From Scyliorhinus canicula (lineage: Eukaryota): a DNA stretch of 64,000 nucleotides. Below are positions 1-57,124 of this stretch, one piece after another. Position numbers and translations under genes: made by a program. Every line of letters starts with the position of its first letter. Within the stretch, counting starts at the first letter, position 1. The DNA is taken from positions 62,001-126,000 of the forward strand of contig NW_024055467.1 in NCBI RefSeq assembly GCF_902713615.1. The letters are read 5' to 3'. The notes below the pieces were generated by a model. It did no database searches, was not told where the DNA came from, and saw only the letters and a program-made list of their open reading frames with translations.

Positions 1-39
1 TCATCCAACCTTGTGAGACACCAGCGAGTTCACAAGTGA
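1..39 (+). CDS. 3' end of a C2H2 zinc-finger gene (partial, begins before the window)
   Basis: Frame 1 reads SSNLVRHQRVHK-stop, a terminal finger, followed by the TGCTGTTAATCA 3'UTR motif seen after other ZNFs here. Confidence 0.8.
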   Translation, partial: SSNLVRHQRVHK

Positions 40-175
40 CTGCAATGTTCCAATTCTGCAGTTATTCCTGCTGTTAATCAGATTTAGGAGTAAAACGTGT
101 TCATTATGAAACAGGGGAGTGTCTATGCTGTTGCTGATAGCCACAGTAACCAGGTTGCAGTTGGAAGACTTTGCA

Positions 176-430
176 TTTATAATAATAATAATCTTTATTG
201 TCACACGTAGGCTTACATTAACACTGCAATGAAGTTACTATGAAAATCCCCTCGTCGCCACATTCCAGCGCCTGCTTGGGTACACGGCGGGAGAATTCAG
301 AATGTCTAAATTACCTAACAGCATGTCTTTCTGGATTGTGGGAGGAAACCAGAGCACCCAGAGGAAAACAACACAGGCACAGGGAGAACTCTGCACTGAC
401 AGTGCCCAAAGCAGGGAATCGAACCTGGGC
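176..430 (-). mobile_element. SINE, HE1-like head with GTGACAATAAAGATTATT tail
   Basis: Reverse complement of the 2929-3238 copy. Confidence 0.75.
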
Positions 431-597
431 CTTTGCAGTATATAGTGCCTTTCACAACTTCAGATGTCTCTGTTCGCCTCCAAAACAGCAATGTGATAAT
501 GACCAGTGATTTTGTTTTTAGTGAGTTTGATTGCGAGTAAGCTATTAGTCAGAGAGCAGTGAGAACTCCCCCTACTGTCCTTCTAACAATGCTCGGA

Positions 598-968
598 GAT
601 TTTGTTTAATAATATTACTCCAGAATAGATAAGGGGAACCAATGGATGTGGTGCATTTGGATCTTCAGAAGACTTTTGATAAACTCCCACAGAGAAGGTT
701 AACAAACAAGATTGGGGGGGGGGGGGGGGCGGGGGAGTATAATGGCACGGATTGAGGATTCACAGAAAACAGAGAGTAGGAATAATCAGGTCATTTTCAG
801 GTTGGCAGACTGAATAGTGAGGTACGGGAAGGATCAGTACTTGGGCTCCAGCTATTCACAATCTACATCAATGATTTGGATGTGGGGACTAAATGCAATA
901 TTTCCATGTTTGCTGATGACTCAAAACTAGGTGAGAATATGCATTGTGAGGAGAGTACAAGGAGGATT
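598..968 (+). mobile_element. CR1 LINE reverse-transcriptase fragment
   Basis: Degenerate DVVHLDLQKTFDKLPH, GSVLG..LFTIYINDLD and SMFADDSKL motifs. Confidence 0.8.
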
Positions 969-1318
969 CAAGATGAGTAACGCAAACTGAACATCATGTC
1001 AAGATCTGACACAGTCACTTGATTCATCAGGACCTGAATATCATCAGCCTTTGAATGTGGAAGGAGAAATGTTTGTCTGTTCTGTCTGTGGGAAAAGATT
1101 TCAAATATCAGTGTGACTGGAAAAGCACCGAGACCCACACAACACACACCCGAGTGAGAGTGTTCCAATGAACTGACTGTGGAAAGAGCTTTTACCAGTT
1201 ACACAGCCTGAAGAAACATTACACCATTCACAGTGAGGAGAGACAGTGCACATGTTCTATGTCTGATCAAGATTGCAACTGATCATCCATCCTGGAGAGA
1301 CACAAGGACACCGGCACC

Positions 1319-53324: not shown

Positions 53325-53850
53325 CTCACTGGAATAACTGGGTGAATCCCTTCCCACGCTCAGAACAGCTGAATGGTCTGTCGCCGGTATGACTATGGTG
53401 ATCAGTCTCCAGCTCACATGGGGATCTGAATCCCTTCCACAGTCCCCATATTTCCAGGCTTTCAGCATGCTGCTGGTGACCTTGCTGCTTTCCACGTTGA
53501 CGATCAGTTGAAGTCCCCACAGAGAGCATGTGTACAGTCTCTTCCCACTCTGAATGGTGTGATGTTTTTTCAGACTGTGCAACTGGTTAAAGCTCTTTCC
53601 ACAGTCAGTTCACTGGAACACTCTCGCTCGAGTCATGTGTGTATTGGGTTTTTTTTTTCAGTCACACAGATCTTGAAAACATTTTCCTACAGACAGAACA
53701 GCCAAACATTTCTTCCACATTCACAGGCCACTGATATGCAGGTTCTGATGAATGGAGCGACTCTGTTAAATCTTGATGTGAAGTTTGATTTGAGTTTCCA
53801 TCTGTAAATCCTCCCCTTGTAATATCCTGTAAAAGGAGTTTCCAAAAATC
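53325..53850 (-). pseudogene. C2H2 ZNF pseudogene (mirror of 39650-40490)
   Basis: [11 protein letters not shown], with Cys lost and a frameshift; truncated by an L1 remnant. Confidence 0.8.
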
Positions 53851-54169
53851 ATCAGTAGGGGCAGGTACGGTGGTTCAGTGGTTAGCCGAGGACCCGGGTT
53901 TGATCCCGGTTCTGGGTCACGGTCAGTATGGAGTTTGCACGTTCTCCCCGTGTCTGCGTGGGTCTGGTCCCCACAATACAAAAAGATATGCATGTAGGTG
54001 AATTGGCCAAGCTAAAATTACTCCTTAATCGGGGGAAAAAAGAATTGGGTACTCTAAATTTATTTCAAAAAAGGATTGCCTCTTTCCTAATGTTCACAAG
54101 TAAAGGGGTGGGTTGGCTGAGGTGAAGGCTGACATTTCACGGCAATTACATTAATAATGGACTGTTATT

Positions 54170-55950
54170 ATGGAGGACCAACCCGGGCTTGTTGAGGGTT
54201 GGTGATGTATATAAGAAGCTGCTCAATGTGATCATGATGCCCCTGGAAAGAAGGGAGGTGGAGGTAGTTGTGGCGACGGATGCGGAAAAGGGGTTCAACT
54301 GGGTGGAGTAGGACTATTTATGGGAGGTGCTGGGACGTTTTGGGTGCGGGAAGGGCTTTATCGGCTGGGTTAGGCTGTTGTACCAGGCCCCGGAGTCTAG
54401 TGTGAGGACGAATAGGACGACTTCTGACTACTTTAGACTGTACCGGGGGACAAGACAGGGGTGCTCCCTCTCCACACTGCTGTTTGCGCTAGCTATAGAG
54501 CCACTGGCAATTGCTCTGAGGGCTTCAAAGGGCTGGGGGGGGGGGGGGGGGGGGGGTGTGGAACATAGAGTCTCGCTGCACGCAGGCGGCCTGCTCTATA
54601 CGTTTCAGATCCGGTGGCAGGGATGGGCGAAATCGTGGCGATCTTGGGGGAATTTGGCCAGTTTTCGGGGTATAAATTGAACATGGCAAAGAGTGAGATG
54701 TTCGTAGGCCAGGCGAAGGGGTCAGGAGGATCGGCTAAGGGAGCTGCCATTTCGGTTGGTTGGGGACAGCTTCAGATATCTAGGGATACAAGTGGCGCGG
54801 GTCTGGGGCCAGTTACACAAGTTGAACCTGTCCCGGTTGGTTGAACAAATGAGGGGCGAGTTTCGGAGGTGGAATGCGCTCCCGTTGTCGTTAGCTGGGA
54901 GAGTGCAGACGGTTAAAATGACGGTCCTTCCGAGATTTTTGTTCGTTTTTCAGTGTCCCCATTTTCATTCCGCATTCCTTTTTCATGAGGGTCAATAAAT
55001 TTTTAAAAATAAATTTAGAGTACCAATTCATTTCTTCCCAATTAAGGGGCAATTTAGCATGTTCAATCCACCTACCTTGCACATCTTTGGGTTGTGGGGG
55101 CGAAACCCACGCAAACACGGGGAAAATATGAAAACTCCACACGGACAGTGAGTCAGAGCTGGGACCTCGGCACCGTGAGACTGCAGTGCTACCACTGCGC
55201 CACCGTGCTGCCCTGAGGGTCAATAAAATTATCCTGGGCTTTGTATGGGCGGGTAAGTCCCCGCGAGTGAAGAAGGTGATGCTTGAGCGGAACCGGGGGA
55301 AAGGAGGGCTTGTGCTGCCGAATTTTAGCAATTATTGGGCGGCCAACATAGCCATGATAAGGAAATGGGTGGTGGGGGGGTGGGGTCGGTCTGGGAGCAG
55401 ATGGAAGCAGCATCATGTAGGGGCACCAGTCTGGTGGCATTGGTAACTGCGCATCTGCCATTCCCGCCGGCGCGGTACTCCACCAGCCCTGTAGTGGTGG
55501 CGGGTCTGGGGTCAGTGGAGGAGGCACATGGGAGCAATGGGGGCATCAATCTGGTTCCCAATATGTGACAATCGCCAGTTTACCCGGGGAGCATGGATTG
55601 GGGGGTTCCAAATATGGAGGAGAGCAGAAATTCAGAGGATGGGGACCTATTTTTAGAAGGGAGCTTTCCTAGCTTGTGGGCACTGGAGCAGAAGTCTGGT
55701 TTGGCGAGGGGGAATAATTTTAGATATTTACTGGTGCGGGACTTTCTGCGTAGGCAGGTATCATCCTTCCCACGAAGGGGAATCCAGATCAGGGTAGTTT
55801 CCAGAGGATGGATGGGGGAGGGAAGCGTCTCTGACATCTGCAAATAACTCATGGGGGCAGAGGAGACGCAGACCGAAGAGCTGAAGCATACGTGGGAGGA
55901 GCAGCTTGGGGGGGGGGGGGGGGGGGGGAGATAGAGGAGGGTCTGTGGGA
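54170..55950 (+). mobile_element. L1 ORF2 fragment with nested SINE (55000-55213, -)
   Basis: RGTRQGC.LS.LLFALAIEPLA and LSLAGRVQTVKMTVLPRFLF motifs. Confidence 0.88.
55000..55213 (-). mobile_element. Short HE1-head SINE with A/T-rich tail and 14-bp TSD
   Basis: TGAGGGTCAATAAA at 54986-54999 and 55214-55227. Confidence 0.88.
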
Positions 55951-56752
55951 ATTGTCTACCCCAGAGGAATGTGGAGCCTCAGTCATCCAGGTATGTTCAA
56001 GACAAATATTGACAGGTTTCTAGATATCGAAGATATTGAGGGATATGGGGATTGTGTGGGAAAATGGTGCTGAGGTAGATCGGCCAAGGATCTCATTGAC
56101 TGGTTGAGCAGACTCGATGGGCCGAATGGCCAACTCTTGCTCCTATTATAATCTCTTGGTCCTGATCGGGAAGCAGTGAGCTGAGCTTGGAATCTGTCAA
56201 TCAACATGAATCAGCACCTTCAGGAGAATTGGGAGGGTGAATATTAGATACGGCAGTGTGAGAATGGAGGGAGATTGTGTGGGATGGAGATTTACAGCTT
56301 TTGGAGAACAATAGAGGAAATAATGTTCCATTGGAACTAGAATTGTCTGCTCTGAATTTCTATCCTGAACTAACAATGATGATTTTTTGTAAATTGTTTT
56401 AAAGGATATTGGAAGAGGAGGAATTATAGACAGAAATCTCAAACTTCACATCTCGATATGACAAACGCACTCGATTTCTTCTGATCTGAACATCATCGCG
56501 AGAAGAAGAAATGTTTGTCCGATCTACCAGCTTCAAAAGATTTCAAACATCAGTGTGACTGGAAAAGCACCAAAACCCACACAACACACACCCGAGTGAG
56601 AGTGTTCCAGTGAATTGATTGTGGAAAGAGCTTTAACCAGTTACACAGCCTGAAAAACCATTCACAGTGAGGAGAGACAGTGCACATGTTCTGTGTGTAG
56701 ACAAGGCTTCCACAGACTGTCCAATCTGGAGAGACACGAGGAGACCCAAAAC

Positions 56753-57124
56753 ATGGAGAAACCGTGGAAATGTGGGGACTGTGGGAAGGGATACAGATTC
56801 CCATGTGAGCTGGAGTCTCATCGACACAGTCACACTGGGGAGAGGCCATTCATCTGCTCTCAGTGTGAGAAGGGATTCACTCAGTTATCTCACCTGAAGA
56901 CACACCAGCGAATTCACACCGAGGAGAGGCCGTTCACCTGCTCTCAGTGTGGGAAAGGATTTATTGATTCATCCGTCCTGCAGAGACATCAACAACTTCA
57001 CACTGGGGAGAAACCATTCACCTGCTCCCTCTGTGGGAACAGATTCACACAGTTATCCAGTCTGCAGACACATCAGCGAATTCACACTGGGGAGAGACCG
57101 TTCTTGGTGGAGACCTGCTCTTAG
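56753..57124 (+). CDS. C2H2 zinc-finger protein ZNF-E, 123 aa from MEKPW, 4 fingers
   Basis: Inverted paralog of ZNF-C with the same TAG stop; candidate acceptor AG at 56403-56404. Confidence 0.75.
   Translation: MEKPWKCGDCGKGYRFPCELESHRHSHTGERPFICSQCEKGFTQLSHLKTHQRIHTEERPFTCSQCGKGFIDSSVLQRHQQLHTGEKPFTCSLCGNRFTQLSSLQTHQRIHTGERPFLVETCS

What the first reader, a model, noticed from the sequence alone, without database searches (positions are those of the whole stretch)
1..57124. KRAB-less tandem zinc-finger family with a near-invariant W-containing lead finger
Seen: all five ORFs start their intact array with the same unit, KPWKCG(D/E)CGKG(F/Y)x(Y/F)P(S/C)xLxxHxRxH, and two pseudogenes carry a decayed version. 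It has Pro at helix position +1, while downstream fingers vary freely. No KRAB, SCAN or BTB exon is visible, and the spliced 5' leaders contain in-frame stops. Known: tetrapods use KRAB-ZNFs and cyprinid fish use FiNZ-ZNFs to repress transposons. Inference: elasmobranchs may run an analogous expanding ZNF system in which the conserved lead finger acts as the co-repressor or dimerisation module. The cluster lies among at least eight transposon clades.
Basis: partly seen in the sequence, partly recalled or inferred. Interest (0 to 1): 0.72.

Follow-up and report, generated by a model that had tools for sequence, protein, structure and literature searches.

The report
Shark fingers-only ZNFs with constant finger
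This catshark-type region holds a cluster of zinc-finger genes that encode nothing but fingers and all share one unusually constant finger at the start of the working array; the family is old (sharks and skates) and I found no paper on it, but what the constant finger does is still unknown.

Summary
Five ORFs and two dead copies carry the same finger, with Trp two residues before the first Cys and Pro at helix +1. None of the 33 downstream fingers in the window has it. No KRAB or SCAN is detectable, and the 5' leaders carry stops.

Corrections:
- The W finger is not the ancestral first finger. Two genes (A-type) have an equally conserved, partly degenerate finger before it. Three (B-type) have three fossil fingers upstream and an ATG in the linker just before KPWKC.
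- Two of the five ORFs are truncated.
- A second recurrent finger type occurs inside the arrays.

The finger was found in ten elasmobranch species, including a skate, and in no teleost, frog, lungfish or hagfish hit. Among window paralogs its helix face has pN/pS 0.61, against about 1.4 in downstream fingers.

Its proposed effector or dimerisation role is untested. It looks like a canonical finger, and the dimer test gave no verdict. No RNA evidence was obtained.

The scan found this family before on other DNA of this genome (s1-236521, s1-200271, s1-253617, s1-203735). Verdict: a real family, not found in the papers searched, and a new variant of the lineage-specific poly-ZNF kind. The mechanism is open.

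The parts
1319..1825 (+). Z1, a B-type gene. The ORF runs from the ATG in the linker before the W finger (W finger 1325-1408). It has six fingers; finger 2 lacks a His.
991..1318 (+). Z1 non-coding leader plus three fossil fingers (alpha, beta, gamma), with stops and a frameshift.
13632..14669 (-). Z2, an A-type gene of 345 aa: N-peptide MEGK.., a pre-finger with Cys2 replaced by Tyr, the W finger (14552-14469) and ten more fingers.
14670..14760 (-). Z2 splice-acceptor motif (14760-14747; the exon starts at 14746) and a leader with a frameshift and stops.
16149..16186 (-). Promoter-like element upstream of Z2: CGCATGCGC, 18 nt, then AAGATGGCGGC. Its ATG matches the 'MAA' start of the Mustelus and Heterodontus gene models.
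31942..32979 (-). Z3, an A-type gene of 345 aa: a pre-finger with His2 replaced by Gln, the W finger (32862-32779) and ten more fingers.
32980..33090 (-). Z3 splice-acceptor motif (33090-33077; the exon starts at 33076) and a leader with TGA in the third codon position of the array frame.
30935..31584 (-). Decayed finger array with stops downstream of the Z3 stop codon.
37405..37935 (-). Z4, a B-type ORF (W finger 37929-37846) with six fingers. It stops inside finger 7 and non-finger DNA follows.
37936..38250 (-). Z4 fossil fingers and leader, with stops.
39771..40503 (+). Pseudogene 1 (B-type), with a decayed W finger at 40317-40454.
53338..53715 (-). Pseudogene 2 (B-type), with a decayed, frame-shifted W finger at 53498-53365.
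56753..57124 (+). Z5, a B-type ORF (W finger 56759-56842) with four fingers. The array then breaks and stops.
56400..56752 (+). Z5 fossil fingers and leader, with stops.
42754..42791 (+). Second copy of the promoter-like element, next to a CpG-rich stretch at 42901-43200.
51992..52029 (-). Third copy of the promoter-like element, the mirror of the copy at 42.8 kb, next to a CpG-rich stretch at 51601-51900.

Best explanation
This is a cluster of an elasmobranch-specific family of Kruppel-type poly-zinc-finger genes that encode fingers only.

Gene plan. Each gene has one large exon holding the whole coding sequence. Upstream lies a non-coding leader and, at least for Z2, a first exon next to a conserved promoter-like element of NRF1/YY1 type (inferred, no RNA seen). 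Translation starts inside the finger region. A-type genes start at MEGK.., followed by one conserved but ligand-poor finger and then the W finger. B-type genes start at an ATG in the linker directly before the W finger; the three fingers upstream of it are fossils.

Selection. The W finger is a signature finger inherited from the family's founder. It has been kept by purifying selection since before sharks and skates split, while the recognition helices of downstream fingers diversify. That much is shown.

Role of the W finger (inferred). The variable fingers read DNA. The constant N-terminal module (the W finger, plus the pre-finger in A-type genes) serves a function shared by all members. 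The extra constraint lies at positions that do not read bases: Lys before Cys1, Asp between the Cys, Tyr -1, Pro +1 and Glu +5. I therefore lean towards a constant contact surface.
For: - Only finger families hit in Pfam. No KRAB or SCAN was found. The N-terminal extensions of seven homologous gene models (the eighth query reached into a finger) have no Pfam domain.
- An S. canicula locus taken from an NCBI assembly has called genes that start at MEEK.. and at MAKPWKC. Models from Pristiophorus, Chiloscyllium and Heterodontus also start at M-E-K-P/A-W.
- Leaders are broken in 8 of 10 copies, while the arrays stay open for about 120-345 codons.
- The W+P finger occurs in 9 of the 150 top library representatives, and all nine are elasmobranch. 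The ten top hits without it are from frogs, a killifish, a lungfish and a hagfish. A further search added seven more shark species, while a second skate (Rhinoraja) showed only a variant without the Trp.
- Among window paralogs the W finger has pN 0.105 against 0.225 in the next finger, at equal pS of 0.39.
- Helix-face pN/pS is 0.61 for the W finger, against 1.44 for the next finger and 1.40 for collinear downstream fingers.
- Both pseudogenes have lost invariant residues.
- The AlphaFold model gives a canonical beta-beta-alpha fold with pLDDT about 90 for the W finger.
Against: - There is no transcript evidence. The runs I laid behaved as DNA contigs, so the start codons, exon 1 and expression are all inferred.
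- With a best-match control, the cross-species excess conservation of the W finger is small. Identity is 0.756 against 0.708, and there is no excess on the helix face.
- The pN/pS figures come from five related sequences and 28-codon units.
- The leader is an open frame in gene models of five other genera and is recognisable in a skate. A short translated N-terminus in other species is therefore not excluded.
- Nothing tested here bears directly on what the finger binds.
Confidence: 0.6

Rival explanations
1. The W finger replaces KRAB or FiNZ as the co-repressor-recruiting or dimerising module of a transposon-silencing ZNF system.
For: - It is the only constant part of B-type proteins, and no other domain is present.
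- The constraint concentrates at non-base-reading positions while +3 varies.
- Downstream helices diversify.
Against: - The finger has a canonical sequence and model.
- Helices of the xPSxL kind occur in ZFP568 fingers, in PDB entries that, to my own knowledge, contain its DNA target.
- The dimer test gave no verdict.
- There is no special packing of the module (pTM 0.51 against 0.63).
- In A-type genes the preceding finger is equally conserved.
- No data tie the family to transposons.
Confidence: 0.25
2. No special function. The N-terminal finger only looks constant because terminal fingers escape the unequal crossing-over that shuffles internal fingers, and because shark DNA evolves slowly. 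It is an ordinary DNA-reading finger.
For: - The best-match control removes most of the contrast.
- Fossil fingers and leaders that cannot be coding are still recognisable between Heterodontus and this window, so neutral decay is slow.
Against: - The adjacent, collinear finger has twice the pN at the same pS.
- Unusual residues (W, K, D, Y, P, E) are kept in 40 fingers from ten species.
- Pseudogenes lose these residues.
Confidence: 0.2
3. A hidden effector. The leader, together with an upstream exon, encodes a short acidic N-terminal domain (a FiNZ-like tag) in functional members, and the copies in this window are degenerate.
For: - The leader frame is open in models from Mustelus, Heterodontus, Stegostoma, Cetorhinus and Amblyraja, and is similar from skate to shark.
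- Three models start at a homologous MAA.. exon.
Against: - Stops or frameshifts at different places break 8 of 10 catshark-type leaders.
- The MAA ATG lies inside a YY1-like promoter motif that is invariant in four copies.
- After about 12 residues the three models diverge completely.
- There are no Pfam hits.
Confidence: 0.12

Closest known systems
KRAB zinc-finger proteins of tetrapods and coelacanth
   Same: Both are tandemly duplicated clusters of poly-C2H2 genes with one large finger exon, TGE(K/R)P linkers and fast-changing recognition helices. Both combine a constant N-terminal part with a variable array.
   Different: No KRAB box was found by tblastn or HMM. The constant part here is itself one or two fingers. 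No TRIM28 link is known or tested.
FiNZ-ZNFs of cyprinid fish (Wells et al. 2023, PMC10547256)
   Same: Both are lineage-specific, KRAB-less, expanded ZNF families defined by a short conserved N-terminal sequence.
   Different: FiNZ is a 28-aa non-finger, Glu-rich tag that is translated. Here the non-finger leader is broken in catshark copies and the conserved unit is a finger. I had no FiNZ sequence to compare. The paper's main text does not mention sharks.
Fingers-only Kruppel-type proteins such as OZF/ZNF146 (own knowledge; NCBI also auto-names several members 'OZF-like' or 'ZNF239-like')
   Same: The protein begins and ends with fingers and has no other domain.
   Different: Those are single conserved genes, not an expanded family with a signature first finger.
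Protein-binding C2H2 fingers, such as the Ikaros C-terminal dimerisation fingers (own knowledge; review by Brayer and Segal 2008, cited in PMC8455134)
   Same: A terminal finger, conserved apart from the DNA-reading fingers, could serve as a protein contact.
   Different: There is no sequence similarity and no evidence of dimerisation here (one search gave no verdict).
Tandem CWCH2 fingers of GLI/ZIC (own knowledge)
   Same: A conserved Trp marks N-terminal fingers that pack together rather than read DNA.
   Different: There the Trp lies between the two Cys. Here it replaces the core aromatic residue two positions before Cys1, and the model shows no extra packing.

Membership tests
Kruppel-type C2H2 poly-zinc-finger proteins | Tandem C-x2-C-x12-H-x3-H units joined by TGE(K/R)P-like linkers. 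| tested here: met
   Pfam zf-C2H2 and zf-H2C2_2 hit with E 1e-24 to 1e-76 in all five ORFs. The 28-residue register holds throughout.
KRAB-ZNF | A KRAB A/B box encoded upstream of the finger exon. | tested here: not met
   tblastn with 117 KRAB/SCAN-type N-termini found nothing outside the fingers. A KRAB HMM built from 46 seeds gave a best E of 0.64 on 2,592 six-frame pieces.
SCAN-ZNF | An N-terminal SCAN domain. | tested here: not met
   The SCAN-bearing N-termini among the 117 tblastn queries gave no hit. This is weaker than an HMM test.
BTB/POZ-ZNF | An N-terminal BTB domain. | not tested
   No BTB query was at hand. Ten long non-finger ORFs gave no BTB hit in Pfam.
FiNZ-ZNF | A translated 28-aa FiNZ tag at the N-terminus; the family is known only from cyprinids. 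| not tested
   No FiNZ sequence was available. The only conserved non-finger sequence here, the leader, is interrupted by stops in 8 of 10 copies.
Elasmobranch W-finger ZNF family (as defined here and by the earlier scan note s1-236521) | The first working finger has Trp two residues before Cys1 and Pro at helix +1 (K-P-W-K-C-G ... Y-P-S). It occurs once per gene, at the head of the array. | tested here: met
   Met in 5 of 5 ORFs and in decayed form in 2 pseudogenes. The finger occurs once per gene unit in fused models of other species.
Elasmobranch W-finger ZNF family | Fingers-only protein: start codon at or just before the finger region and a stop right after the last finger. | tested here: inconclusive
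   The ORF structure and the gene calls on an S. canicula assembly locus agree. However, no transcript or translation data were obtained.

The most novel reading that the evidence does not exclude
Elasmobranchs have for more than 250 million years (own knowledge of the shark-skate split) run a ZNF system in which a constant finger module does the job of KRAB or FiNZ. The module is the W finger, preceded in A-type genes by an equally conserved ligand-poor finger. It would dock a shared cofactor through its non-base-reading surface, while the rest of the array diversifies against transposons. This would be a third, independently evolved solution, and one in which the effector is itself a zinc finger.
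Probability: 0.2. Interest if true: 0.75.

Novelty: new variant of a known kind. Interest (0 to 1): 0.5.

Why it matters
How vertebrates without KRAB-ZNFs aim repression at transposons is only beginning to be answered; FiNZ in carps is one case. [quoted passage not shown] An old, multi-copy, fingers-only family with a constant head and diversifying helices is an obvious candidate for that role.

The constant finger gives a concrete handle for experiments. Five or six named residues can be mutated, and a 30-70 aa module can be fused or pulled down.

If the finger turns out to be only a DNA anchor, the family still shows how new start codons inside finger linkers let arrays shed decaying N-terminal fingers.

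Tried and rejected
- **Whole-protein homolog search.** It was swamped by generic KRAB-ZNFs and was useless for this family.
- **Profile search of the 34-residue finger against 1.84 billion representatives.** The ranking follows the number of fingers, so giant frog and fish proteins dominate. It was useful only after a regex filter.
- **Read laying on 32400-38399 with four runs guessed to be RNA.** Contigs cover the intergenic DNA evenly, and the 'joints' are 20-letter artefacts between finger repeats. The runs are effectively DNA, so there is no splice or expression evidence.
- **Homodimer prediction of the Z2 N-terminal 95 residues with zinc.** No verdict (score 0.02). This is neither evidence for nor against binding.
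- **AlphaFold of the N-terminal module against a control triple of downstream fingers.** Both are ordinary beads on a string. pTM is 0.51 against 0.63, so there is no sign of a compact module.
- **The look-up of encoding contigs for S. torazame and one ENA contig.** No DNA was returned because the files are too large. The window's own Z2 protein is not on record.
- **CpG-island scan.** No island lies directly upstream of Z3, Z4 or Z5.
- **Synonymous-site constraint or gene conversion as the cause of the conservation.** Rejected, because the pS of the W finger equals that of the next finger.
- **Pro at +1 as a sign of a non-DNA-binding finger.** Rejected, because such helices occur in fingers of ZFP568, whose PDB entries contain, to my own knowledge, its DNA target.
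- **The 'MAA..' upstream exon as a coding N-terminus.** Rejected as the main reading, because its ATG is part of an invariant YY1-like motif.
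Full report
**What is in the window.**
A six-frame scan finds C2H2 arrays at five places.
- I call them Z1 (1319-1825, +), Z2 (14669-13632, -), Z3 (32979-31942, -), Z4 (37935-37405, -) and Z5 (56753-57124, +).
- A search for Trp-x-Cys-x2-Cys in all frames hits exactly these five arrays once each.
- The ten-sequence alignment of this finger, five from the window and five from database proteins, has 83% mean column identity.
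- tblastn with the finger finds two more, decayed copies. One is at 40317-40454 (+), inside a dead gene at 39771-40503. The other is at 53498-53365 (-), inside a dead gene at 53715-53338.
- Both dead copies have lost the first Cys and the Pro before Trp.
- Pfam sees only zinc-finger families in the five ORFs.

**Is it more than chance?**
- In 1,140 fingers of tetrapod and teleost proteins, Trp at that position occurs in 0.44% and Pro at helix +1 in 1.32%. The two never occur together.
- In 3,414 fingers of the top library representatives, the two occur together 19 times.
- In the window the combination marks 5 of 5 heads of arrays and 0 of 33 later fingers.

**Corrections to the anatomy.**
The W finger is not the ancestral first finger. 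There are two gene types.
- *A-type (Z2, Z3).* The protein starts MEGK.., then comes a finger, then the W finger. That first finger lacks one zinc ligand: Cys2 is Tyr in Z2 and His2 is Gln in Z3. Across 17 module rows from A-type proteins (one of them a spurious second match in Stegostoma P0283) it is as conserved as the W finger. Identity is 0.58 against 0.61, and on the helix face 0.52 against 0.42. The next finger drops to 0.51 and 0.25. In skate unit 2 the pre-finger is fully canonical.
- *B-type (Z1, Z4, Z5 and both pseudogenes).* Upstream of the W finger lie three recognisable fossil fingers, with stops and a frameshift. Part of this fossil is matched by Heterodontus models. An ATG sits in the linker directly before K-P-W-K-C.
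- Called genes or models in S. canicula, Pristiophorus, Chiloscyllium and Heterodontus start at that Met.
- Z4 stops inside finger 7 and Z5 after finger 4, with non-finger DNA behind. Both are truncated.
- Downstream fingers are not wholly free. [10 protein letters not shown]-type finger followed by an RCSHCGTGF-type finger recurs in several species.

**No hidden effector found.**
- tblastn with 117 N-termini of KRAB and SCAN proteins found nothing. A KRAB HMM run on all six-frame pieces also found nothing.
- In A-type genes a conserved acceptor (..caatttcacag) precedes the exon at 14746 and 33076.
- The roughly 35-codon leader behind the acceptor carries stops or frameshifts, at different places, in Z1-Z5, in two genes of S. 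canicula locus L001 and in contig L002. That is 8 of 10 copies.
- The same leader is an open frame in gene models of Mustelus, Heterodontus, Stegostoma, Cetorhinus and Amblyraja. It has no Pfam match.
- Three of those models start 'MAA..'. The Mustelus one aligns to 16156-16052 (-), about 1.4 kb upstream of Z2.
- That ATG lies inside AAGATGGCGGC, 18 nt after CGCATGCGC. The pair of motifs is invariant in three window copies and in L001, against 0.03 expected for the 11-mer.
- By my own knowledge these resemble YY1 and NRF1 sites. I therefore read the element as promoter plus non-coding first exon, not as a coding N-terminus.
- This is inference, because no RNA evidence was obtained.

**Distribution.**
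- *First two searches:* Targeted searches and the library search show the W+P finger in Scyliorhinus torazame and S. canicula, Cetorhinus, Carcharodon, Heterodontus (on four chromosomes-scale contigs), Pristiophorus and the skate Amblyraja.
- *Last search:* The last search added Stegostoma, Chiloscyllium and Mustelus.
- *Second skate:* Rhinoraja has a variant without the Trp.
- *Hits without it:* Teleost hits lack the finger. The ten best-scoring representatives without it come from frogs, a killifish, a lungfish and a hagfish.
- *Not sampled:* the chimaera.
- *Fused models:* In fused gene models the finger occurs once per gene unit, at its head.

**Is the finger really more constrained?**
- By ordinal position across 30 gene units, identity is 0.76 for the W finger against 0.57-0.65 for later fingers.
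- With a stricter control, using the best-matching downstream finger and cross-species pairs only, the gap shrinks to 0.756 against 0.708. It vanishes on the helix face.
- Within the window, where DNA is available, the W finger has pN 0.105 against 0.225 for the collinear next finger, at equal pS of 0.39.
- Helix-face pN/pS is 0.61, against 1.44 for the next finger and 1.40 for collinear downstream fingers. Scaffold values are 0.14 against 0.32 for the next finger and 0.33 for collinear downstream fingers.
- Equal pS argues against gene conversion or nucleotide-level constraint.
- Comparing 40 W fingers with 226 other fingers of the same proteins, the extra constraint is largest at five positions: the Asp between the Cys, Glu +5, the Lys before Cys1, Tyr -1 and Pro +1. 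Position +3 stays variable.
- These samples are small and the sequences are related.

**Mechanism.**
- The finger is canonical. The AlphaFold model gives a beta-beta-alpha fold with pLDDT near 90, and Pro is the first helix residue.
- xPSxL helices occur in ZFP568 fingers, whose PDB entries contain, to my own knowledge, its DNA target.
- The N-terminal module is not predicted to pack specially: pTM is 0.51 against 0.63 for a control.
- The homodimer test gave no verdict.
- What is shown is therefore a constant head and a diversifying body.
- What is inferred is that the head provides a function common to all members through a surface that does not read bases. Partner docking and a fixed backbone or register contact are about equally likely.

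**Literature and earlier notes.**
- I found no paper with the motif and none describing a shark ZNF family of this kind.
- Wells et al. 2023 describe FiNZ and do not mention sharks in the main text.
- The scan met this family before on other DNA of this genome. Note s1-236521 reached the same core reading. Notes s1-200271 and s1-253617 describe promoter islands and very many copies. Note s1-203735 describes a fingers-only, shark-and-ray family.
- New here: the A/B architecture with fossil fingers and a linker ATG, the equally conserved pre-finger, the promoter-motif explanation of the 'MAA' models, and the per-position and pN/pS figures.

Noticed in passing
window 35513-43146 and 57710-51622: An inverted segmental duplication, 82-90% identical, with a spacer of about 8.5 kb. 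It carries Z4, pseudogene 1 and a promoter-like element on one arm, and Z5, pseudogene 2 and the mirrored element on the other.
   Followed up: partly
window 22421-23569: A minisatellite with a period of about 39-40 bp and copies about 95% alike.
   Followed up: no
window 16186-16149(-), 42754-42791(+), 52029-51992(-); L001 about 24242-24334: A conserved promoter-like pair of motifs: CGCATGCGC, 18 nt, then AAGATGGCGGC. Which genes the two mirrored copies drive is unclear, because the nearest finger exons are 4.4 kb away in the antisense direction or about 13.7 kb away in sense.
   Followed up: partly
window 30935-31584(-) and 1-33(+): A decayed finger array with several stops lies just downstream of the Z3 stop codon. 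The last helix of a further ZNF gene is cut by the window start.
   Followed up: no
protein P0124 (Heterodontus) against window 14709-14843, 32940-33128 and 1108-977: The N-terminus of this RefSeq model is the antisense translation of a family leader and intron end. It looks like an annotation artefact, and it shows that the acceptor region is conserved between Heterodontus and this genome.
   Followed up: partly
window 44776-45495(+): An ORF with a Pfam ALKBH8_N match (E 1.9e-11). It was the only Pfam hit among ten long non-finger ORFs and is probably part of a retroelement.
   Followed up: no
window 51400-51520(-): A short in-frame tandem repeat (about 19 codons..TTWDCRPCPL..) in a GC-rich stretch. 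It was picked up only because it contains W-x-C.
   Followed up: no
window 32400-34900: All four public DNA-like runs differ from the window at the same sites, about 2% in unique DNA. The assembled individual or population differs from those sequenced.
   Followed up: no
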